Virus record (IMG/VR): IMGVR_UViG_3300020172_006270
Coordinates: 1-64,000 of that record
Direction: 5' to 3' (one strand)
DNA: 64,000 nt
Shown: piece by piece, positions 4,456-43,929 of the stretch
Layout: every line of letters begins with the position of its first letter
Numbering within the stretch: the stretch's first letter is position 1
Made by a program: the position numbers and the translations under genes
Notes under the pieces: generated by a model
The model's input: only the letters and a program-made list of their open reading frames with translations
Databases searched by the model: none
What the model was told of the DNA's origin: nothing

Positions 4456-5048
4456 AATGCAATTATTTCAACCCCTTCGGATAATTTTTTCATTAAGTCT
4501 AATTGTTCATCCAAGAACATGCCATTCCCTTTTGTGGCCTCAAAATCAGAATGATATTGTGTGCCACCATCAATTCCTAAAGTGAAAAGTTGTTTCATTT
4601 TCAATGATTGAGCCACCTGTATAATTAAAACGCCAAAAGCATACTTGAACAATAATTGGTTTTTTTGAAAAAGGTTAGTAGAAAAACCATCTGGCGTAAT
4701 TATGTCATAGGAGAACAGTCTCTTTTCTTTATAGAGCCTGCCCATTTCACGGTCCTCTTGAACCAATGATGTTAAGTCCTTTACTGTTCTGCACTGATAA
4801 TTCATGAAAGCAGAACAAATGACGAACTGAGAATGTTTTGTTTGATCTTGAAACATTTCATAGTCTGTAAAATGACTTATCGGCGTGTTGAAAACAGCCG
4901 CAGCGTGATTGGAGCCTACCACGTTAAAAGCATTCAAGTATTCTGGCTTCCATCGACTCGATGATGGACCTTTGCCTACAGCTAGAAGCTGCTTATCTTT
5001 AAGCAGGGGCAACTCTTCGATGTGTTGAATGTTAACAGTCTTTATCAT
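4452..5048 (-). CDS. Maf/DUF115/sialyltransferase-fold-like protein
   Basis: VGKGPS...GSN...LGIDG pattern. Confidence 0.5.
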   Translation of the reverse strand: MIKTVNIQHIEELPLLKDKQLLAVGKGPSSSRWKPEYLNAFNVVGSNHAAAVFNTPISHFTDYEMFQDQTKHSQFVICSAFMNYQCRTVKDLTSLVQEDREMGRLYKEKRLFSYDIITPDGFSTNLFQKNQLLFKYAFGVLIIQVAQSLKMKQLFTLGIDGGTQYHSDFEATKGNGMFLDEQLDLMKKLSEGVEIIAL

Positions 5049-5734
5049 GACGAGGCCGCAAGATATTCATTCCAAAAAAAGCTATCACCTGAATTGAGGC
5101 CCACAAAATGTATGCCCGCCCTACCGAAACACAAATGTTCCGCAGCATCTTTACAAGCAATGTAAATATCAGAAATAGGGATGACCTTTACATTGCATTC
5201 TAACAATATCGAAGCAACTAAACCTTGTTCGTCAAAATGACCTTCCCAATTCCCTAACAACTTAGATTCAATCTTCTGACCAAAATCAAATTTGGGCGGC
5301 AAGCCAAATAATCCTGTGTTTAACTTTTGATTGCTTGCAATAGTGCTATCGTATTTTCCATATCTTCTTTTAAGCCCTTCTGTGCAGAATATCATGTCGT
5401 CAGAGTCAAAAAAACTATCAATTATTGGAAGTTGACCATAGACGATCAAATCATTGTCTATGAAAATTTCATGCGAGTCGCTCCTAATTCTAGGAGGATA
5501 TAACTTCCAAGAAGTCAAAAAAGGATCAACGGATATTGATCTCAAACAATCTCTCTGGTCTATAAAGTTTACGCCCTGCAATCCAATTGAATGAACATTG
5601 TCTCCACTGTGGCATACAAAATAATCGCATGATTCACCGTATCTTTTCTTCATTAAAGATATAGAGTAAATCAGGGATTGCAGTCCTTCCTTAGAAGAGT
5701 TGCGACCTATTGTCCATCTAAATAAAGGCTTCAT
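5045..5734 (-). CDS. Putative GT-A glycosyltransferase; paralogue of 1539..2363
   Basis: WKLYPPR, DNDL, NTGLFGLPP, DEQGLV, HFVG; start placed at MKPLFRW. Confidence 0.6.
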   Translation of the reverse strand: MKPLFRWTIGRNSSKEGLQSLIYSISLMKKRYGESCDYFVCHSGDNVHSIGLQGVNFIDQRDCLRSISVDPFLTSWKLYPPRIRSDSHEIFIDNDLIVYGQLPIIDSFFDSDDMIFCTEGLKRRYGKYDSTIASNQKLNTGLFGLPPKFDFGQKIESKLLGNWEGHFDEQGLVASILLECNVKVIPISDIYIACKDAAEHLCFGRAGIHFVGLNSGDSFFWNEYLAASS

Positions 5735-5788
5735 TGAACAACCCAATAAAAAGAAACCAAAACACTCGTTTATTCTTGATTCAAGTGA

Positions 5789-7587: not shown

Positions 7588-8696
7588 TCCCATACTTAGT
7601 TCAGAGCAACCTATCCTCGGAACAACATAAAAACTGCTGCCAACGATTTGGCTACTCTGCGGAATGGGATCGCTCCGTCCGAGAGAATGTATGGAGACGC
7701 CACCAGGAGGATAAAAACAAAGAAGCATCAGGGTGGAAGATCGGCGATCACCGTCGCCGACTGGTTCACTTCAAAGACAAATATGGACTTCAAGGAAACG
7801 ATTTTTATCTTACCTCCACATACCTGTTCCTGTCACTGAAGTTGCCAAAAAAAGAACTCAGACTGTATCAGGAAAAAATATGTGACACTTGGCGACCGTC
7901 CAACACACTACAACTGAAAATGGTTGAAAGCAAAGTCCATATAGCGGACATACAGCATGGACGAGAAACGCCTCCTGATTATTCCAACCTAGACGTATGG
8001 TTGTATTCTGAACCTGTGTCTGACCGGGTATTAGACAAGCCTTGGAAAATTCTCAAAACGGGAATTAGAGAACGCCGCCCGGCAGGTCGCCCAACGACTA
8101 TAAACAGAGCCGATCTGGAACAATTCTTTCCGGCGCAAATTGAACTAGGCTGTGGGCCATCCATCGAAACTGGCATTCCACCACTGAACTACTTCCACAA
8201 CCTATTCTCACTGCAAAAAAACGGCAAGTTCGTATTCGCTGCGGACGACGATCAATTACTGGATGTTTTCAGCGACCCCGCTGAATGGTATTCCAGGGCG
8301 GTCGTCATGCACCGACAATGTTTACTGGCCGAGCCGTCGCCATTCTACCACAAGCTCAAATGCCTGCATGATGAGGGTCGAATCGTTGGACCGATATTGA
8401 ATAACAATTTTGACGGGCTACCGTTAAGTGTGGGGCTGGAAGAATTTTCACTTCGCCAGTACGACGAGGACGGCCTATATCCATCCATTAAATTCCACCC
8501 TAACGCCAAATCACTCCTGGTAATCGGATCACACGCTGACCGCCGCAATTGCCAAGCTCACGCCCGCAATCATGGACTCACGGTCGTCTATATTGACCCC
8601 GAAGGATATACAATCGGAGACAAATTCGCCCCGTACCCAGTCGAATCACCCCAAGACCAAGACTACATACTCCGCATCCCAGCATCGGAGTTATAA
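7584..8696 (+). CDS. Divergent sirtuin (SIR2-like) domain protein
   Basis: LGCGPSIETGIP, NNNFDGL, LLVIGS, VVYIDP. Confidence 0.6.
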   Translation: MIPYLVQSNLSSEQHKNCCQRFGYSAEWDRSVRENVWRRHQEDKNKEASGWKIGDHRRRLVHFKDKYGLQGNDFYLTSTYLFLSLKLPKKELRLYQEKICDTWRPSNTLQLKMVESKVHIADIQHGRETPPDYSNLDVWLYSEPVSDRVLDKPWKILKTGIRERRPAGRPTTINRADLEQFFPAQIELGCGPSIETGIPPLNYFHNLFSLQKNGKFVFAADDDQLLDVFSDPAEWYSRAVVMHRQCLLAEPSPFYHKLKCLHDEGRIVGPILNNNFDGLPLSVGLEEFSLRQYDEDGLYPSIKFHPNAKSLLVIGSHADRRNCQAHARNHGLTVVYIDPEGYTIGDKFAPYPVESPQDQDYILRIPASEL

Positions 8697-8697
8697 T

Positions 8698-9348
8698 ATG
8701 TACACACCTTGTTTCATCGGCGAAGACTGTGAGGCATCCTATCGGTGGAAACAATTGGGACAAACCCCAACTGGCCCGTTCCATAAAAAAGGTATTACTT
8801 TAGCTAGGCTTATGCGTCTGTTGCAAGATGACTTCTTGAATATATGCAACAAGAATAACCTACGAATAGTCGATCCCCTTAAAGGGTACAAAAATTCACT
8901 AGGAGGTTGTCTACGGGTTACGGAAGTAATCGACAACCAAATCGGCATGGAACTGTGGCACGACTTTCCTGCTCATCTCCAATTTGATGAACAATACAAC
9001 AGATTCATTGATGGAATGAGTAAAGAAATGGCTGAATTCAAGAATCTTGTCTGCTACGACCTACGACCCATATTATTCATACACAAAAAAACAGACCTTT
9101 TGTCAATTGCCGATAATAGCGATCTGAAGAATCAGTATCGAATATTGCTATCCCAACTGAAGTACCACCGAGCGGGCAGAAGATTTCTATTGGTCGCCCT
9201 GGGTCACAACGACCAGTTCCGAGAGGACTGGAAAATGGAAAACCTTATGACCCTTCAGATTCACACCCCTAAATTGTGGGGACATGACTTGCCAGAAGAA
9301 TCATGGCGCAAAGTCTACTCTCTGTGCAATCAAGCTCGTCTATTGTAG
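8698..9348 (+). CDS. DUF1796-like (papain-like) protein
   Basis: IGEDCEAS...GPF N-terminus and HDF motif. Confidence 0.5.
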   Translation: MYTPCFIGEDCEASYRWKQLGQTPTGPFHKKGITLARLMRLLQDDFLNICNKNNLRIVDPLKGYKNSLGGCLRVTEVIDNQIGMELWHDFPAHLQFDEQYNRFIDGMSKEMAEFKNLVCYDLRPILFIHKKTDLLSIADNSDLKNQYRILLSQLKYHRAGRRFLLVALGHNDQFREDWKMENLMTLQIHTPKLWGHDLPEESWRKVYSLCNQARLL

Positions 9349-9352
9349 CAAT

Positions 9353-9389
9353 AAAAAAGGGAACCAATACTATCGAGTAATTGATTCCC
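9353..9389 (-). terminator. Intrinsic terminator of the candidate minus-strand ncRNA
   Basis: GGGAAUCAAU/AUUGGUUCCC stem followed by U6 on the minus strand. Confidence 0.7.
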
Positions 9390-9560
9390 TTATCCTTGGT
9401 CGAGGGATTTCCTCTGTTTGAACTTCGCCCGATCAGTGCCTTAAAGCATCCTGATCCTGCATTGGCTCTGCCCACTCGTGACCTCAGATCAAACTTCCAT
9501 GCAGACAGTCGGAACTGAGTTGGTGTCACGGACTGAAGTTAGGGAGTCAGTCAAGGACTC
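9353..9560 (-). ncRNA. Candidate structured ncRNA (~210 nt), family unknown
   Basis: Intergenic; nested stems AACUUC/GAAGUU, GUCC/GGGC, GUGAC/GUCAC, CUCAG/CUGAG, UUCC/GGAA, GAUCAG/CUGAUC; TATAGATA upstream (9563-9570); terminator downstream. Confidence 0.6.
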
Positions 9561-9607
9561 ATTATCTATAATGCAGACAGAGAAATTTTAGAACAGGGTC
9601 AAAATAT

Positions 9608-10621
9608 ATGCTCAAGTTGGTGAAAAAGAAGGTGAAGAAGCCGGTATCGCTGCGAGATCACCAGGAAAGACGAAATAAAATACTCATCAAAAGACGCAGC
9701 GGCGGCTACGGCGACATCCTCATGCAAAGAATGCTATTTGAGGACTTTTCAAAGGCTTTTCCAGGCGCAGAAATCACATTTGCCTGCCCTGCAATGTACG
9801 TCGAAATGGCCAAAAATCACCCGTTCGCCAAAGCGATTGATCTTGGCTCCGTAAATGAGGATGAATATGGAGCCATATACGACCTATCAACCGCCTGTCG
9901 AGTTCACGAATCTCGCTTTGGAGAGAGAAATCAAGATCATAGAAGCGATATTTGGGCGGCACATTGCGGCATAGTTTTGAACAACCATAATATGATGCTG
10001 AAGCCAGACCCAATTGTGTTGGAGCAATGCCGAGAAGCATTCAAGCGATACAACAAGGAAGGAAAGCCAGCAGTATTGCTTGCTTCGACTTCCACTCCCG
10101 ATATGATAGGCACAGCCAAGAGCCTGACCTACAATCAAATCAGCGATGTAGTCAAAGCACTAAGAGATCAAGGCTGCTATGTGTTTACTATCCACACCGA
10201 CAAGCAAGTTGTGTACGACAACTTGGGAGTAGACCAAATATTCAGCATCCATCAACAAGCCTGGATTTCTATGGTCGAACTAGCTGATGCCGTCATCTCA
10301 GTAGATACTGCGACATTTCATATCGCAGGTGGGCTTCAAAAACCCTTAATTGGGATATTCGCTTTCACTGACGGCAAACTGTACGGCAAATACTACGATT
10401 TTGTCCTGGTTCAAAAACACAGAGACAATGGCGATTGGGACTGTGGCCCATGCTTCAACATGACGACTTGTCCGAAGTCAAAAGAAATTCAGAAGCCATG
10501 CCTGACAGAGCTATCTTCCTCCGACATTCTTCGGGGGTTCGCTGAGGCCGTAGAGAAGTGGCCGTCCTTAAAAAATAGTCTAAAAAATAAGCGAACCGAT
10601 CTGCTTGGTCATACATCATGA
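9608..10621 (+). CDS. GT9 ADP-heptose:LPS heptosyltransferase-like protein
   Basis: GGYGDIL, ISVDTATFHIAGG, C-terminal CGPC...C...C. Confidence 0.85.
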   Translation: MLKLVKKKVKKPVSLRDHQERRNKILIKRRSGGYGDILMQRMLFEDFSKAFPGAEITFACPAMYVEMAKNHPFAKAIDLGSVNEDEYGAIYDLSTACRVHESRFGERNQDHRSDIWAAHCGIVLNNHNMMLKPDPIVLEQCREAFKRYNKEGKPAVLLASTSTPDMIGTAKSLTYNQISDVVKALRDQGCYVFTIHTDKQVVYDNLGVDQIFSIHQQAWISMVELADAVISVDTATFHIAGGLQKPLIGIFAFTDGKLYGKYYDFVLVQKHRDNGDWDCGPCFNMTTCPKSKEIQKPCLTELSSSDILRGFAEAVEKWPSLKNSLKNKRTDLLGHTS

Positions 10622-19268: not shown

Positions 19269-19310
19269 GTGCCTCAATCATGCGGTTACTGCCAAGGATG
19301 TCGTTGTTGA

Positions 19311-19339
19311 AGTATAAGACTCAAACCCTTTGATTGCAA
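19311..19339 (-). promoter_or_regulatory. Sigma70-like promoter of polA: TTGCAA-N17-TATACT
   Basis: Near-consensus hexamers with 17-nt spacer. Confidence 0.7.
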
Positions 19340-19359
19340 GACTGTTCGTTGTCACTTTG

Positions 19360-19901
19360 ATTCTGAGTTGGGTGTACAACAAGCGCTTCTTATAAGTAAT
19401 TTATAAACTAAAAGAGCCTTCTTATTATTGGGATTAACTCTTGTACAAGTAACTGTAAATAGTCACTAATACAATAGCCGAAATTTTCGGCTGTAATCCC
19501 AACAATAAGTTAGCTCAAAGCTCTTTCTGATTTACACCCAACTTCCGTTGGAGCAATTATAGGTTCAGCGGATTATATCGGTTTCTTTGTGATTTATCCC
19601 AACCTCGTTTATCTGAGCGACGAGGCACGCCGTTGGTGGGTGTTGAATCCTAGCTCTTATTCAATCCTCGGAGATTGCTCTCCGACTAGCCGCTACACGT
19701 CGGCCCATTGCCACCTAAGACCTCTTTTGAGGAAGAAACCCTATCCAGTAAATCAGGCCCTCTGACCAATCCGGGGTTCTGGGGCTGTAGCATCAAAGGC
19801 TTTCCAAAATCTGAAGGGATATTTCTAACCCAGCAGCGATGACCTGTATGCCTTCTTGAAGGTTTTCACTCGGCTATTTGGATGCACTTATTTCACCGAG
19901 C
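19360..19901 (-). ncRNA. Candidate large structured ncRNA (~540 nt), family unknown
   Basis: No ORF of 60 aa or more; many stems including a 7-bp GCAA-capped hairpin (19668-19685), an 11-bp long-range helix (19366-19376/19533-19543) and a 16-bp helix with G-U (19421-19436/19494-19509); own promoter. Confidence 0.65.
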
Positions 19902-19907
19902 GTCAAT

Positions 19908-19936
19908 ATCCTAGACATGGAATTCGTTTCGATCAA
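19908..19936 (-). promoter_or_regulatory. Sigma70-like promoter TTGATC-N17-TAGGAT driving the candidate ncRNA
   Basis: 17-nt spacer; predicted +1 (~19901) coincides with the first base of the 5' stem. Confidence 0.6.
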
Positions 19937-20008
19937 GCCAGATAGAACGTATTTTTACCGCTTCCGGCCATTCGATCCCAGGTTTTTTCTTTTAGTTTGG
20001 TTGTAGCG

Positions 20009-20016
20009 CATAAATA
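20009..20016 (+). promoter_or_regulatory. Late-type promoter CATAAATA
   Basis: Recurrent TAAATA motif upstream of 20064. Confidence 0.45.
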
Positions 20017-20063
20017 CGGTAGACCCAGGTACGGGTATTTCTTTTTTACTATGGAAGGATTCC

Positions 20064-40844: not shown

Positions 40845-42323
40845 ATGCCAATAGTAATAACGAAACCAGTGCTTACAGCAACCTATTTAGTGGTTGATGA
40901 GAATGGCACTGTTATTTCGTCTCACCCTCAAAATATCGAGATCGAGTCAGTAGACGCCGATAGTTTTTTGCAAGCTCTAAGTGATTTGATGCTGGCAAAA
41001 GACGGCCTTGAACTCACCGCTAGTGAAGTTCATATGTTGATACGCACTGGCAATATGATTTCTCTCGGTAACGTCCAAGCTGCCACTCTCGGCGTTCAGA
41101 GCCAATATCAATTCCCCACAGCGGTTGGATCGACCGGGCAGGTTATTGGGTATCAAGGCACGAGCCAGTTGGCATGGGTTAACTCAGGTAGTGGCGCTCA
41201 AGGCTTTCAAGGAAACCAAGGCGCACAGGGCAATCAAGGCGCACAAGGAAATCAAGGCAATCAAGGAAACCAGGGGTTTGCAGGCTCGGTTGGTTCACAA
41301 GGTTTTCAGGGCAATCAAGGCAATCAGGGAAATCAAGGCACACAAGGCAACCAAGGGAACCAGGGATTCCAAGGTTCTGCCGGTACTGTCGGAAATCAAG
41401 GATTTCAAGGTAATCAAGGTAATCAGGGAAACCAAGGAACACTAGGAAACCAAGGCAACCAGGGATTACAAGGTTCTGCTGGTACGGTTGGTTCACAAGG
41501 ATTCCAGGGAAACCAAGGCAATCAGGGTAATCAAGGCACTCAAGGCAACCAAGGAAACCAAGGCAACCAAGGAAACCAAGGAACCGCTGGATCACAGGGT
41601 TTTCAAGGCAACCAAGGCGCACAAGGTAATCAGGGAAATCAGGGCAACCAAGGCACACAAGGTTTCCAAGGCAATCAGGGTAATCAAGGAACTGCTGGCG
41701 CACAAGGATTCCAGGGCAACCAAGGCAATCAGGGAAATCAGGGCAACCAAGGCACGCAAGGTTTCCAAGGCAATCAGGGCAACCAAGGAACTGCTGGCGC
41801 ACAAGGATTCCAGGGAGTTCAAGGCGCACAAGGAAATCAAGGATCACAAGGAAACCAGGGCATTTCTGGCTTAGGGTTTAGTGTTCCTTATACATTCAAC
41901 ACAAGCACAGTGATGTCGGCGGCTTCTGGAGAAGTTCGATTCAATAATGCTACGATTGCATCTATTACCAATATCGACATCTCAAGAACAGATCGCAATG
42001 GTGCTGGTCAGCAAGCTGTGTTGGATCGCATGTCATCTGGCACATTGTTTAGATTCTCTGCCGAAGCTAGTGCTACACAATACAACTTCTTCCAAGCCAA
42101 TAGCGTAACGAAGAATGCTCAAGATTATAACTTTGCTGTTGCATACTTGTCGAACAATGGATCGTTGTTCTCTAACTCAGCAAATATTGGTTTGGGAATT
42201 GCCATGATCGGCTACCAGGGCAATCAGGGCGCTCAAGGCTTCCAGGGCTACCAAGGCTTCCAGGGCGCTCAAGGCGCACAAGGACACCAGGGCAACCAAG
42301 GTAATCAAGGAGGAGGCATATAA
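40845..42323 (+). CDS. Collagen-like (G-X-Q)n fibre protein
   Basis: Long GNQ/GFQ/GAQ triplet run flanked by non-repeat domains. Confidence 0.88.
   Translation: MPIVITKPVLTATYLVVDENGTVISSHPQNIEIESVDADSFLQALSDLMLAKDGLELTASEVHMLIRTGNMISLGNVQAATLGVQSQYQFPTAVGSTGQVIGYQGTSQLAWVNSGSGAQGFQGNQGAQGNQGAQGNQGNQGNQGFAGSVGSQGFQGNQGNQGNQGTQGNQGNQGFQGSAGTVGNQGFQGNQGNQGNQGTLGNQGNQGLQGSAGTVGSQGFQGNQGNQGNQGTQGNQGNQGNQGNQGTAGSQGFQGNQGAQGNQGNQGNQGTQGFQGNQGNQGTAGAQGFQGNQGNQGNQGNQGTQGFQGNQGNQGTAGAQGFQGVQGAQGNQGSQGNQGISGLGFSVPYTFNTSTVMSAASGEVRFNNATIASITNIDISRTDRNGAGQQAVLDRMSSGTLFRFSAEASATQYNFFQANSVTKNAQDYNFAVAYLSNNGSLFSNSANIGLGIAMIGYQGNQGAQGFQGYQGFQGAQGAQGHQGNQGNQGGGI
41193..41861 (+). repeat. 9-bp degenerate collagen repeat (GGN-NNN-CAR)
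   Basis: Directly visible ggcaaccaa/ggaaatcaa units. Confidence 0.9.
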
Positions 42324-42324
42324 A

Positions 42325-43929
42325 TTGATAATCACGATTAAACCACAAATATCGGTTAGACTTCTTAAAGCAGATGGTGATACCATCCTGTCTGCTCATG
42401 ATAAATCTATCGACGTTGATTTGGTTGCCGATGATTTCATCTCTGCATTCAATACTTTGTTTGCCGACAAAGACGATTATCAACTTGTTGAAAGACCTAT
42501 TGTTTCGACCAATTTCTTATTGGTAAACAATAATGATGTTGTTGTGGCAACTCATCCACAAAGAATTGAACTTGGATTGAACATCGAGAGCTTTTTGGAT
42601 GGCATGAATAAGCTGATCGAAATTCGAGATGGCTTAGGCGGCGTGAATGCGTTGCTCACAATGGGCAATATCATTTCACTCGGCAATGTGCAGGCTGTAT
42701 CTCTTGGCATTCAAAGCCAGTATACGTTTCCAACGACAGCCGGAGTGACTGGACAAGTCATTGGCTATCAAGGCACATCTCAATTGGAATGGATCAGTGG
42801 TGCTACTGGTTTGCAAGGCCCTCTTGGTCTTCAGGGTCGGCAAGGAAATCAGGGGAATCAAGGCAACCAAGGCACGCAGGGCTTCCAGGGCGTTGGATCG
42901 CAAGGCTCGCAAGGCTTTCAAGGCAACCAAGGTCGTCAAGGAAACCAGGGCAACCAAGGCAATCAAGGCAACCAAGGATTTCAAGGTGTTGGATCGCAAG
43001 GCTCTCAAGGCGCACAGGGAAACCAAGGTCGTCAAGGAAACCAGGGGAATCAAGGCAACCAAGGTACACAAGGTTTTCAAGGGTCTGGCTCGCAAGGTCT
43101 GCAAGGCGCTCAGGGAAACCAAGGCAACCAAGGTGTACAAGGCAACCAAGGAACGCAAGGCAACCAAGGCCGACAAGGAAATCAGGGAGCCGGTCTGCAA
43201 GGCGCACAGGGAAACCAAGGTCGTCAAGGCAACCAAGGAAATCAAGGCAATAGAGGCTTACAGGGTCCGCAGGGCCGACAAGGAAATCAGGGAGCCGGTC
43301 TGCAAGGTCGGCAAGGCAACCAAGGAACACAAGGAAGACAAGGCAACCAAGGCAATCAAGGCTTTCAAGGTCGCCAAGGCAACCAAGGTTTAGGACTTCA
43401 GGGGCGACAAGGCTTTCAAGGCAACCAGGGGAATCAAGGCTTTCAAGGCAATCAGGGAGTTATCGCTCCTGGGTTTGTGTTGCCGCTCGCATTCAACACA
43501 AGCACCGTAATGTCGGCGGCATCTGGAGAGTTGAGATTCAACAACGCTACTGTTGCATCTGTGACCAATATTGACGTGTCGAGAACCGATAGAAATGGTT
43601 CTGGTCAACAGGGCGTGCTTGATAAATTTGGTAATGGCACTTTGTTTTTCTTTACGTCTGAAGCGGTAGCTTCTCAGTATAGTTTTTTCACTACTACTGG
43701 CGTGACGAAGAATGCAAGTGACTATAACTTCAGCGTTAGCTATATTTCTAATGCTGGTACTTTGTTTGCTAACTCACAAAATGTGAGTATGGGTGTTGCT
43801 CTGCTTGGATTCCAAGGAATCAGCTTGCAGGGCGCTCAAGGCTTCCAAGGACGCCAAGGCTCTCAAGGCTTCCAAGGACACCAAGGCAACCAAGGCGATC
43901 CTGGTGGTCCGGTTATTGAAGACCCTTAA
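42325..43929 (+). CDS. Collagen-like (G-X-Q)n fibre protein, paralogue of 40845..42323
   Basis: Shares GNxISLGNVQA...GQVIGYQGTSQL and FNTSTVMSAASGE...SRTDRNG. Confidence 0.88.
   Translation: MIITIKPQISVRLLKADGDTILSAHDKSIDVDLVADDFISAFNTLFADKDDYQLVERPIVSTNFLLVNNNDVVVATHPQRIELGLNIESFLDGMNKLIEIRDGLGGVNALLTMGNIISLGNVQAVSLGIQSQYTFPTTAGVTGQVIGYQGTSQLEWISGATGLQGPLGLQGRQGNQGNQGNQGTQGFQGVGSQGSQGFQGNQGRQGNQGNQGNQGNQGFQGVGSQGSQGAQGNQGRQGNQGNQGNQGTQGFQGSGSQGLQGAQGNQGNQGVQGNQGTQGNQGRQGNQGAGLQGAQGNQGRQGNQGNQGNRGLQGPQGRQGNQGAGLQGRQGNQGTQGRQGNQGNQGFQGRQGNQGLGLQGRQGFQGNQGNQGFQGNQGVIAPGFVLPLAFNTSTVMSAASGELRFNNATVASVTNIDVSRTDRNGSGQQGVLDKFGNGTLFFFTSEAVASQYSFFTTTGVTKNASDYNFSVSYISNAGTLFANSQNVSMGVALLGFQGISLQGAQGFQGRQGSQGFQGHQGNQGDPGGPVIEDP
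42808..43458 (+). repeat. 9-bp degenerate collagen repeat
   Basis: GNQ/GRQ/GLQ triplets. Confidence 0.9.

What the first reader, a model, noticed from the sequence alone, without database searches (positions are those of the whole stretch)
9353..9570. Stand-alone ~210-nt pseudoknotted ncRNA candidate, antisense to its neighbours
Seen on the minus strand: TATAGATA promoter-like box; 5' hairpin GAGUC/GACUC; closing helix AACUUC-A-GUCC/GGGC-GAAGUU (9540-9530/9430-9421); arm GUGAC..CUCAG.UUCC[loop]GGAA..CUGAG.GUCAC; arm GAUCAG..UGCUU/AGGCA.CUGAUC. The loop UCUGCAU can pair with downstream AUGCAGG (7-bp pseudoknot), and GUUUGA can pair with UCAAAC. A U6 terminator follows. G-U pairs favour the minus strand. 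No gene lies downstream in that direction, so it is not a simple cis riboswitch. I do not recognise the family. Inference: a late-expressed trans-acting RNA (protein sponge, anti-defence RNA, ribozyme or packaging RNA).
Basis: partly seen in the sequence, partly recalled or inferred. Interest (0 to 1): 0.75.

Follow-up and report, generated by a model that had tools for sequence, protein, structure and literature searches.

The report
Unclassified pseudoknotted small RNA gene, huge phages
A roughly 205-base gene for a compactly folded, non-coding RNA with a pseudoknot sits between two oppositely oriented genes of a very large freshwater phage; it is conserved with compensating base changes in a few related phages, matches no catalogued RNA family, and its job is still unknown.

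Summary
Window 9353-9558 (minus strand) is a stand-alone structured RNA gene in a ~450-kb-class freshwater phage. It has an AT-rich box 12 nt upstream and a strong hairpin plus U6 terminator. No reading frame is conserved.

- **Homologues:** six further distinct sequences, all phage or metagenome contigs.
- **Fold:** 98.6% of pair cells are canonical, 12 pairs change on both sides, and slid controls give 1-2.
- **Strand:** 45 G·U cells against 3 A·C cells fix the minus strand.
- **Not conserved:** A terminal helix, GUCCUUG/CAAGGAU, closes the fold instead.
- **Known families:** Rfam 15 gives nothing, and two pattern scans of 185,579 bacterial and archaeal genomes found no copy.
- **Distribution:** four complete relatives (436-572 kb) lack it, so it is accessory.
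- **Position:** its terminator is an exact border between a conserved block and a hypervariable island.

Transcription is not shown; the RNA-library contigs look like DNA carry-over. "Late-expressed" has no support.

My best reading is a stable, trans-acting RNA recognised by its shape, probably by a protein. An orphan aptamer, a ribozyme and a local regulator remain open. It is a new family of a known kind.

The parts
9561..9570 (-). AT-rich promoter-like box TATAGATAAT. It is conserved as yATAnATA and starts 12 nt before the first base of P1 in all clades.
   Evidence: Not enriched in the window. Function inferred only.
9353..9558 (-). Predicted transcript of about 206 nt: a 169-nt core (9390-9558) plus the terminator.
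   Evidence: CM R1 scores 98-203 bits in 6 further distinct homologues. Stops occur in every frame of every homologue.
9552..9558 (-). P1 5' strand, GUCCUUG.
   Evidence: Pairs with 9392-9398. 100% paired in 7 sequences. G·U to G-C twice and U-A to U·G once.
9392..9398 (-). P1 3' strand, CAAGGAU.
9530..9539 (-). P2 5' strand, ACUUC-A-GUCC.
   Evidence: Core covaries with 9422-9430 in L004 and L029 under manual alignment. The outer pairs are broken in L002, L032, L003 and L030.
9422..9430 (-). P2 3' strand, GGGC-GAAGU.
9478..9529 (-). P3 arm. P3a GUGAC/GUCAC, P3b CUCAG/CUGAG, P3c UUCC/GGAA, the 12-nt loop L3 (9510-9499), and the invariant 7-nt bulge GUUUGAU (9494-9488).
   Evidence: All five P3b pairs and three P3a pairs change on both sides and stay paired. 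L3 and the bulge are invariant apart from the covarying loop position 9500, A to G in L004 and L029.
9499..9505 (-). Pseudoknot 5' strand, UCUGCAU, inside loop L3.
   Evidence: 7 of 7 pairs in 7 of 7 sequences. One pair is A-U to G-C in L004 and L029.
9456..9462 (-). Pseudoknot 3' strand, AUGCAGG, in the junction between P3 and P4.
9432..9455 (-). P4 arm. P4a AUCAG/CUGAU, an invariant GA bulge, P4b UGCU/GGCA, and a UNNA tetraloop.
   Evidence: Two pairs change on both sides and two on one side, all kept.
9402..9414 (-). P5 hairpin, GAGG-loop-CCUC, with an A-rich loop.
   Evidence: The fourth pair is G-C, A-U (L004) or U-A (L029).
9353..9389 (-). Intrinsic terminator: the stem GGGAAUCAAU.../...AUUGGUUCCC plus U6 (9358-9353). 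On the + strand the hairpin is followed by UUAUCCUU, so it may end the upstream + gene as well.
   Evidence: One search gives -16 to -22 kcal/mol and z -4.4 to -6.6 in four homologues. Seven stem pairs covary.
9352..9353 (.). Homology breakpoint. The conserved block ends at the U-tract and a hypervariable region begins.

Best explanation
Window 9353-9558 (minus strand) is a real, independently transcribed gene for a non-coding RNA of about 205 nt. It belongs to a small clade of freshwater phages with expected genome sizes of about 430-490 kb.

**Gene layout**
- The RNA starts at or next to the G of GUCCUUG, 12 nt after the start of an AT-rich box.
- It ends at a strong hairpin plus U-tract.

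**Fold**
- Helix P1 pairs the very 5' end with the segment just before the terminator.
- P1 encloses a three-way domain (P2 carrying the P3 and P4 arms) and a small hairpin, P5.
- The P3 loop pairs with the P3/P4 junction as an H-type pseudoknot.

**Inferred mode of action**
With both ends base-paired, the RNA should be long-lived. I infer that it acts in trans through its folded shape, not by long antisense pairing and not as a cis-regulatory leader. The invariant surface is L3 with the pseudoknot, the GUUUGAU bulge, the GA bulge with the P4b hairpin, and P1. Most likely a conserved protein binds that surface, making the RNA a scaffold or decoy.

**Shown versus inferred**
- Shown: the gene boundaries, strand, fold and selection.
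- Inferred only: transcription, the 5' end, trans action and the protein partner.
For: **Fold and strand**
- 98.6% of 290 pair cells are canonical. 12 pairs change on both sides; only 1 of 500 shuffles reaches that, and slid controls give 1-2.
- The RNAalifold-derived nested model gives 97.4% and 15 pairs, reached by 0 of 500 shuffles.
- G·U cells number 45 against 3 A·C cells.

**Selection**
- 83 of 177 columns are invariant, and core identity is 55-62% between clades.
- The adjacent GT9 protein is only 48-53% identical between those clades, and the flanking DNA is mostly unalignable.

**A unit of its own**
- Strong terminators are present in all clades.
- Homology stops exactly at the U-tract.
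- There is no conserved ORF.
- It is single-copy in four records.

**Not cis-regulatory**
- No same-strand gene lies downstream.
- The downstream flank differs in every pair of the five window/L003-subclade members; only L004 and L029 share it.
- By inspection of the aligned sequences, there is no conserved antiterminator pairing.

**Not long antisense to a known host RNA**
- The 21 specified bases of the 24-nt invariant-block pattern have no exact match on either strand in 185,579 species genomes.
- blastn against E. coli genomes finds nothing.
Against: - No transcript evidence exists. The RNA-library contigs that touch the locus cover 9443-9650 (promoter plus the GT9 start) or 9350-9459, running about 15 nt beyond 9350 and so past the U-tract. 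They carry no strand information, and they show the same sequence variant in unrelated studies, so they look like DNA carry-over.
- No partner protein was identified. No gene other than GT9 is consistently adjacent.
- There are only seven distinct sequences in three sublineages. Most double changes trace to one deep split. The alignment was fitted to the model, and P2 rests on my manual alignment.
- Complete relatives do without the RNA.
- The promoter is not canonical for sigma-70 and is not enriched.
Confidence: 0.4

Rival explanations
1. Orphan aptamer. The fold binds a small molecule, such as a nucleotide, a nucleotide sugar or a cyclic-nucleotide signal. It would act as a sensor or a sponge without a classical expression platform.
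For: - The architecture resembles an aptamer: P1 closes a multi-helix junction with a pseudoknot, many junction and bulge nucleotides are invariant, and the core is about 170 nt.
- The terminator follows P1 after 2 nt.
- The genomic neighbourhood is sugar-nucleotide and glycosyltransferase genes.
Against: - No riboswitch family matches, even at E<=10.
- There is no regulated gene downstream, and the downstream flank is not conserved across the family.
- There is no conserved antiterminator alternative. A CUCUGGC repeat that could form one exists only in L004 and L029.
Confidence: 0.15
2. Local regulator of the divergent GT9 glycosyltransferase operon. It would act through promoter competition, or by antisense pairing if the GT9 mRNA starts inside the RNA gene.
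For: - The RNA lies head-to-head with the GT9 start in all seven contexts, 50 nt from the ATG in the window.
- In the window and L003 subclades, a perfect + strand TATAAT (9567-9572) overlaps the RNA's own box.
- In L003 the first 31 GT9 codons stay beside the RNA even though a gene was inserted behind them.
Against: - The transcript does not overlap the GT9 ORF.
- The + strand TATAAT is absent in L004 and L029.
- Antisense or promoter interference would not need a covarying tertiary fold with 83 invariant columns.
- The GT9 homologue loci searched (L005-L020 and complete relatives) lack the RNA.
Confidence: 0.12
3. Ribozyme. The RNA would be self-cleaving or otherwise catalytic, a compact fold in the size range of glmS.
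For: - It has a pseudoknotted, highly conserved core with invariant unpaired nucleotides.
- From my own knowledge, phage genomes are a known home of small ribozymes.
Against: - No match to any ribozyme model in Rfam 15.
- No flanking exon or repeat context was seen.
- No data on discrete cleavage products exist.
Confidence: 0.1
4. Base-pairing small RNA. The invariant loop L3 or the GUUUGAU bulge would be a seed against a host or phage mRNA.
For: - It has a terminator with a U-tail and a 27-nt block that is invariant at 25 positions, typical of seed conservation.
Against: - The loop is engaged in an intramolecular pseudoknot that covaries.
- There is no exact match to the block on either strand in 185,579 genomes, and no second significant match in the phage's own 223 kb.
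- Most of the RNA is tightly structured.
Confidence: 0.1
5. Anchor for recombination. Like tRNA or tmRNA genes that serve as island insertion sites, the conserved RNA gene end would be where variable cassettes are exchanged. The RNA itself would matter less than its DNA.
For: - The homology breakpoint lies exactly at the U-tract in all pairs of five close relatives.
- The 20 kb beyond it in G001 has no nucleotide match anywhere in the 223-kb record.
Against: - A breakpoint at the edge of any selected gene is expected anyway.
- No integrase or repeat was seen at the border.
- This does not explain the RNA-level covariation or the G·U asymmetry.
Confidence: 0.05
6. Not an RNA at all, but a conserved DNA element (operator or promoter region) or a chance fold.
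For: - Transcription is not demonstrated.
- The region lies between divergent promoters.
Against: - 12-15 pairs show compensatory double changes, against 1-3 in slid controls.
- 45 G·U cells against 3 A·C cells is a strand asymmetry that DNA-level palindromes do not give.
Confidence: 0.03

Closest known systems
Orphan structured ncRNA candidates from phage and metagenome comparative genomics (Weinberg et al. 2010, PMC2864571; Fremin et al. 2023, PMC10690425)
   Same: It is found only by conservation and covariation in uncultured phage DNA, lies between genes, often carries a terminator, and has unknown function.
   Different: It matches none of the Rfam 15 models. The Fremin candidates are 29-151 nt, and this unit is about 205 nt. 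Whether part of it is on their list could not be checked, because no supplement is held.
phi29-type packaging RNA (pRNA)
   Same: It is phage-encoded, stand-alone, about 120-170 nt, and function depends on loop-loop Watson-Crick pairing. Covariation cannot tell whether the L3 x junction pairing here is intra- or intermolecular.
   Different: There is no match to the Rfam library, which I expect to include a pRNA model. The genome is of the ~450-kb class with DnaB-like and PolA-type replication genes, not a small protein-primed podovirus. Complete relatives lack the RNA, which an essential packaging part should not allow.
Protein-sequestering RNAs (6S RNA, CsrB/RsmZ)
   Same: It is a stable, independently transcribed, terminator-ended RNA that would act by being bound, which is the working model here.
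   Different: It lacks the long bulged duplex of 6S. The GGA motifs sit in stems, and one of them is lost in L004 and L029, unlike the repeated GGA hairpin loops of CsrB. There are no Rfam matches.
Riboswitch aptamers with a closing P1 and a loop-junction pseudoknot (for example SAM-I), and the glmS ribozyme
   Same: P1 closes a multi-helix junction, a pseudoknot links a hairpin loop to a junction strand, junction nucleotides are invariant, the core is about 170 nt, and the terminator follows directly after P1.
   Different: There is no downstream gene, no conserved alternative pairing, and no model match.
GOLLD and ROOL (large ornate phage-associated RNAs; PMC12286853)
   Same: It is a phage-borne, accessory, structured RNA of unknown function in lake metagenomes.
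   Different: Those RNAs are 500-800 nt and, from my own knowledge, often lie next to tRNA genes. This one is about 205 nt and lies 65 kb from the phage's tRNA cluster. There are no Rfam matches.

Membership tests
Any Rfam 15 family (4227 covariance models) | Score at or above the family's gathering threshold. | tested here: not met
   0 matches in the whole window. At E<=10 on 231-551-nt slices of the window and of L029, only terminator-hairpin noise of 10-24 bits appeared.
Riboswitch (cis-regulatory aptamer plus expression platform) | A regulated gene lies downstream on the same strand. | tested here: not met
   The next minus-strand ORF is at 5045-5746, behind four + strand genes. The downstream flank is non-homologous in every pair of the five window/L003-subclade members; only L004 and L029 share it.
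Riboswitch (cis-regulatory aptamer plus expression platform) | A conserved mutually exclusive pairing (antiterminator) involves the P1 3' strand. | tested here: not met
   By inspection of seven sequences. A CUCUGGC repeat able to pair with the terminator 5' arm exists only in L004 and L029, and nothing equivalent exists in the window or L003 subclades.
Riboswitch (cis-regulatory aptamer plus expression platform) | Specific ligand binding. | not testable with these tools
   Needs in-line probing or ITC.
tRNA / tmRNA | Cloverleaf or tRNA-like domain with a tag reading frame. | tested here: not met
   ARAGORN finds none in the window. In the whole record it finds tRNAs only at 75-85 kb.
cis-antisense RNA | The transcript overlaps a gene on the opposite strand. 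| tested here: not met
   9353-9558 lies wholly between the stop at 9348 and the ATG at 9608. Overlap with an unmapped GT9 5' UTR cannot be excluded.
CsrB/RsmZ-type sponge | Several GGA motifs are presented in hairpin loops or single strands and are conserved. | tested here: not met
   The conserved GGAs lie in P3c, the pseudoknot and P1, which are all paired. CAGGAUG becomes UGCGAUG in L004 and L029.
Hfq-type base-pairing sRNA | An intrinsic terminator with a U-tail, plus a conserved accessible seed with a complementary target. | tested here: inconclusive
   The terminator is present. The most conserved stretch is inside a covarying pseudoknot. No complementary site was found in 185,579 genomes for the 24-nt pattern, but short seeds cannot be tested without the host.
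phi29-type pRNA | Intermolecular loop-loop pairing, and a phi29-like packaging motor and genome type. | tested here: inconclusive
   Loop-junction complementarity exists and covaries, but intra- and intermolecular pairing cannot be told apart. The genome type is unlike phi29, and the RNA is absent from complete relatives.
Structured ncRNA gene (generic) | Compensatory base changes beyond controls, strand asymmetry of G·U pairs, own terminator, no conserved ORF. | tested here: met
Structured ncRNA gene (generic) | A discrete transcript is detected. | tested here: inconclusive
   Only unstranded contigs of a 93%-identical relative were found, and they span the promoter and the neighbouring gene. 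No further read mapping was allowed.
Candidate structured RNAs of Fremin et al. 2023 (DNAVirus_X) | Listed in their supplementary models. | not testable with these tools
   No supplementary files are held.

The most novel reading that the evidence does not exclude
The RNA founds a new functional class: a compact phage-borne catalytic or ligand-capturing RNA. One example would be a stand-alone aptamer that soaks up a host signalling nucleotide, or a small ribozyme. It would be carried as an accessory gene at the edge of a hypervariable island in huge phages.
Probability: 0.15. Interest if true: 0.85.

Novelty: new member of a known kind. Interest (0 to 1): 0.55.

Why it matters
Huge phages are known for carrying tRNAs, tmRNAs and CRISPR arrays. 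Stand-alone RNAs with a tertiary fold and no family assignment are rare, and they are the usual source of new ribozymes, aptamers and protein-regulating RNAs.

This one is small enough (169-nt core) for direct biochemistry. It has a covariation-supported pseudoknot and a defined set of invariant unpaired nucleotides to mutate. It is accessory, which points to a role at the phage-host interface rather than in core replication.

Its position as the exact border of a hypervariable glycosyltransferase island may also help explain how such islands are exchanged.

Tried and rejected
- **Rfam.** I ran it at gathering threshold on the whole window and at E<=10 on three slices. Only terminator-like noise appeared.
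- **Extra pattern hits.** L022 and L027 (viral) and L035-L037 (bacterial MAGs and genomes) are chance matches. The viral ones lie inside coding DNA, and all score under 7 bits with the model.
- **Distant GT9 loci.** L005-L020 have no RNA. I searched L005-L020 with default filters and 12 of them again with filters off. The L012 "hit" is just a terminator hairpin.
- **Relatives found through the HhH glycosylase, and five large records.** No RNA was found. The weak G008 hit lacks the conserved loop.
- **Promoter motif search.** The TATAGATAAT box is not enriched. A k-mer scan of 120 upstream regions gave only SD-like AAGGAG and scattered TATA-type words, with no shared promoter.
- **tmRNA-like tag frame, T-loop, K-turn, anti-SD mimic.** I considered these by eye. 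GAUCACCUC is present in L004 and L029, but none of these features is conserved across clades.
- **Sequence mimicry of E. coli RNAs.** No blastn match.
- **Partner gene next to the RNA.** The neighbours differ between clades. g10455 is unrelated to the methyltransferase-like ORF at the same place in L004.
- **RNA-seq support.** The two run searches and the one read-laying run allowed gave only partial, adaptor-joined contigs.

Full report
**Where it lies.** The window is the first 64 kb of a 223-kb IMG/VR record. Its genes are those of a very large phage: a DnaB-like helicase, a family-A DNA polymerase, a dCMP deaminase, collagen-repeat proteins and many glycosyltransferases. CheckV-type completeness is 46% for this record and 11-40% for three relatives of 52-173 kb. 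That implies genomes of about 430-490 kb. The nearest deposited polymerase, at 33% identity, is in an uncultured 595-kb phage. DNA runs holding the locus come from freshwater, lake, sediment, wastewater and soil. The finding sits in the 259-nt gap between two + strand ORFs: 8572-9348, which is weakly DUF1796-like, and 9608-10621, a family-9 glycosyltransferase called GT9 here.

**The observation.** The minus strand folds better than shuffles (MFE -70.5 kcal/mol, z -2.99, 0 of 200 shuffles as good). The plus strand does less well (z -1.58, 11 of 200). The 3' hairpin plus U6 is a strong terminator at -16.1 kcal/mol with z -5.4. The simple terminator scan missed it. I think an internal mismatch in the stem is the reason.

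**Homologues.**
- A search for GT9 relatives gave 19 viral loci. Three carry the RNA immediately upstream of GT9 on the opposite strand: L002 (95% identity), L003 (87%) and the divergent L004.
- Pattern scans of the invariant block added the metagenome contigs L032, L030 and L029. They also re-found the others.
- Together with the window, that makes seven distinct sequences in three sublineages.
- A covariance model built from four of them (R1) scores 98-203 bits on all seven and finds nothing else.
- R1 finds no paralogue in the 223-kb record or in the three relatives' records. It finds no copy in GT9 loci of more distant phages, even with filters off.
- It finds no copy in four complete 436-572-kb relatives, three with terminal repeats and one classed as a provirus, or in one 79%-complete relative.
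- Two pattern scans of 185,579 bacterial and archaeal genomes gave either nothing or three chance matches.
- The RNA is therefore a rare accessory gene of one sublineage.

| Element | Window position | Evidence |
|---|---|---|
| P1, GUCCUUG/CAAGGAU | 9558-9552 / 9398-9392 | Closes the whole molecule. Paired in all seven, with one-sided changes only: G·U to G-C twice, U-A to U·G once. |
| P2, ACUUC/GAAGU | 9539-9535 / 9426-9422 | Becomes AUGUC/GACAU and UUGUC/GGCAA under my manual alignment. Its outer two pairs are broken in four sequences. |
| P3 arm | 9529-9478 | All five P3b pairs and three P3a pairs change on both sides and stay paired. |
| P4a | 9455-9451 / 9436-9432 | Two pairs change on both sides and two on one side. 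|
| P5 fourth pair | 9411 / 9405 | G-C, A-U or U-A. |
| Pseudoknot, UCUGCAU x AUGCAGG | 9505-9499 / 9462-9456 | Paired in all seven, with one A-U to G-C double change in L004 and L029 inside otherwise invariant sequence. |

Counted on the model-fitted alignment, 98.6% of 290 cells are canonical and 12 pairs change on both sides. One of 500 shuffles reaches that, and structures slid by 1-3 columns give 1-2 pairs and 29-44% pairing. The RNAalifold-derived nested model gives 97.4% and 15 pairs.

Three caveats apply. There are only seven sequences. Most double changes trace to the split between the window-like clade and the L004 clade. The alignment was fitted to the model.

The 5' hairpin GAGUC/GACUC is absent from L004 and L029 and competes with P1. 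The second pseudoknot, GUUUGA/UCAAAC, falls to 3-4 bp in L003, L030 and L004 without compensation.

**Strand and coding.** On the given strand 335 of 344 pair cells are canonical. On the opposite strand only 293 of 344 would be. There are 45 G·U cells against 3 A·C cells. Every reading frame of every homologue contains stops. So this is a minus-strand RNA, not a 5' leader of GT9 and not a peptide gene.

**Boundaries.** A box yATAnATA starts 12 nt before the G of P1 in all clades. It resembles the T4 late consensus, and its spacing would put the 5' end at the first base of P1. It is not enriched in the window, and no shared promoter motif emerged from 120 upstream regions. "Late-expressed" is therefore unsupported.

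At the 3' end the evidence is stronger. The GT9-side flank is 91.7% identical between the window and L002 over 1500 nt. The 1500 nt beyond the terminator are unalignable in every pair of the five window-like and L003-like sequences. The next 20 kb in L002's record have no nucleotide match anywhere in the 223-kb record. The functional unit therefore ends at the U-tract, which is also the edge of a hypervariable island.

**Constraint.** Eighty-three of 177 alignment columns are invariant, 29 of them unpaired. Core identity between clades is 55-62%. The neighbouring GT9 protein is 48-53% identical, and the surrounding DNA hardly aligns. The invariant surface is loop L3 with its pseudoknot partner, the 7-nt bulge GUUUGAU, the GA bulge with the P4b hairpin, and P1.

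**Expression data.** No run gave a clean transcript.
- RNA libraries from unrelated studies (plant, invertebrate, mosquito, gut, and many runs of a coded organism) hold about 13% of the sampled words.
- Laid on the locus, their contigs are a 90-95% identical relative covering 9443-9650 and beyond. That span is half the RNA, its promoter and the start of GT9.
- One short insert covers 9350-9459 and runs past the terminator.
- They carry no strand information. Two unrelated runs share an identical variant set, and a third shares the three of those variants that fall inside its shorter span. All are joined to Illumina adaptor near 9436-9440.
- At that point the genome reads CCCGATCA, which shares six bases (CCGATC) with the adaptor end TCCGATCT.
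- I read this as DNA carry-over, possibly with mispriming. It is not evidence for or against the RNA. The repeated end remains unexplained.

**What it most likely does.**
- *Shown:* a selected, minus-strand, terminator-ended, tertiary-folded RNA gene with both ends base-paired.
- *Excluded or unlikely:* a cis riboswitch, because there is no downstream gene, the downstream flank is not conserved across the family, and there is no conserved antiterminator. Also unlikely is long antisense pairing, because the transcript overlaps no ORF and the invariant block has no complementary site in known genomes or in the phage's own record.
- *Inferred:* it acts in trans through its shape. I put protein binding (scaffold or decoy) first, but only at about 0.4. 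The reasons are that helices such as P1, P3c and P4b are sequence-invariant rather than merely paired, and that no ligand-type expression logic is present.
- *Still open:* an orphan aptamer (0.15), a local regulator of GT9 through overlapping divergent promoters (0.12), a ribozyme (0.10), a seed-type sRNA (0.10) and a recombination anchor (0.05).

**Comparison with what is known.** No Rfam 15 family matches. By architecture it resembles P1-closed aptamers with a pseudoknot. By lifestyle it resembles orphan phage and metagenome ncRNA motifs. It fails the defining tests for riboswitch, tmRNA, cis-antisense RNA and CsrB-type sponge. The tests for pRNA-like oligomerisation and sRNA seeds are inconclusive. 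A 2023 survey of IMG/VR predicted 8495 unnamed candidates of 29-151 nt (PMC10690425). I could not check whether part of this locus is among them.

**Verdict.** This is a real, previously unclassified structured RNA family of narrow distribution. The function is unknown and the interest moderate (0.55). The most novel reading, a new catalytic or ligand-capturing phage RNA, has a probability of about 0.15.

Noticed in passing
window 9352/9353 (end of the U-tract); L050 = G001:C1:21900-41800: The RNA's terminator is an exact homology breakpoint. The GT9 side is 92% identical between close relatives. The other side is unalignable in every pair of five relatives, and 20 kb beyond it in one relative has no nucleotide match in the whole 223-kb record. 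This is the border of a hypervariable island rich in glycosyltransferases.
   Followed up: yes
window 19366-19543, inside the 795-nt gap 19278-20063: A second strongly structured element: nested inverted repeats forming a branched hairpin of about 180 nt. MFE z is -7.9 on the minus strand and -6.8 on the plus strand. It lies between the divergent polymerase gene and the 20064 ORF, at the cumulative GC-skew minimum. The inner part is conserved at 89% in L043, with changes only in loops and no covariation data. It could be an origin hairpin or another RNA.
   Followed up: partly
own record G000:C1:75075-85385 (outside the window): A cluster of 14 tRNA genes restricted to Leu (7), Ser (4), Phe (2) and Tyr (1). 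These are almost all long-variable-arm tRNAs (aragorn).
   Followed up: no
window 9436-9650: Contigs of a ~93% identical relative turn up in RNA-seq libraries of unrelated studies (plant, invertebrate, mosquito, gut, and many runs of one coded organism). They are always joined to Illumina adaptor near 9436-9440, where the genome shares CCGATC with the adaptor end. This looks like a widespread contaminant, mispriming, or both. The repeated end is not explained.
   Followed up: partly
L003 464-1560 (same in L033): In this lineage the first 31 codons of GT9 are duplicated. One copy stays beside the RNA and runs into a stop after 56 codons. A 258-aa nucleotide-sugar-epimerase-like gene follows, and then the intact GT9 with the same N-terminus.
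   Followed up: partly
window 9567-9572 (+) versus 9561-9570 (-): A perfect + strand TATAAT overlaps the minus-strand box of the RNA, 36 nt before the GT9 ATG. These may be competing divergent promoters. The + strand TATAAT is present in the window and L003 subclades but not in L004 or L029.
   Followed up: no
G005-G008 (records behind L045, L046, L010, L012): Complete 436-572-kb relatives, three with direct terminal repeats and one classed as a provirus, lack the RNA. It is an accessory gene of one sublineage.
   Followed up: yes
window 40845-43929: Two adjacent large ORFs (492 and 534 aa) carry collagen triple-helix repeats. They may be fibre or decoration proteins.
   Followed up: no
window 1-64000 / record G000: The record is labelled "provirus" by its source. 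In the parts I annotated it reads as phage: replication genes, a tRNA cluster and AAGGAG-type ribosome-binding sites. I saw no integrase or host flank there.
   Followed up: no
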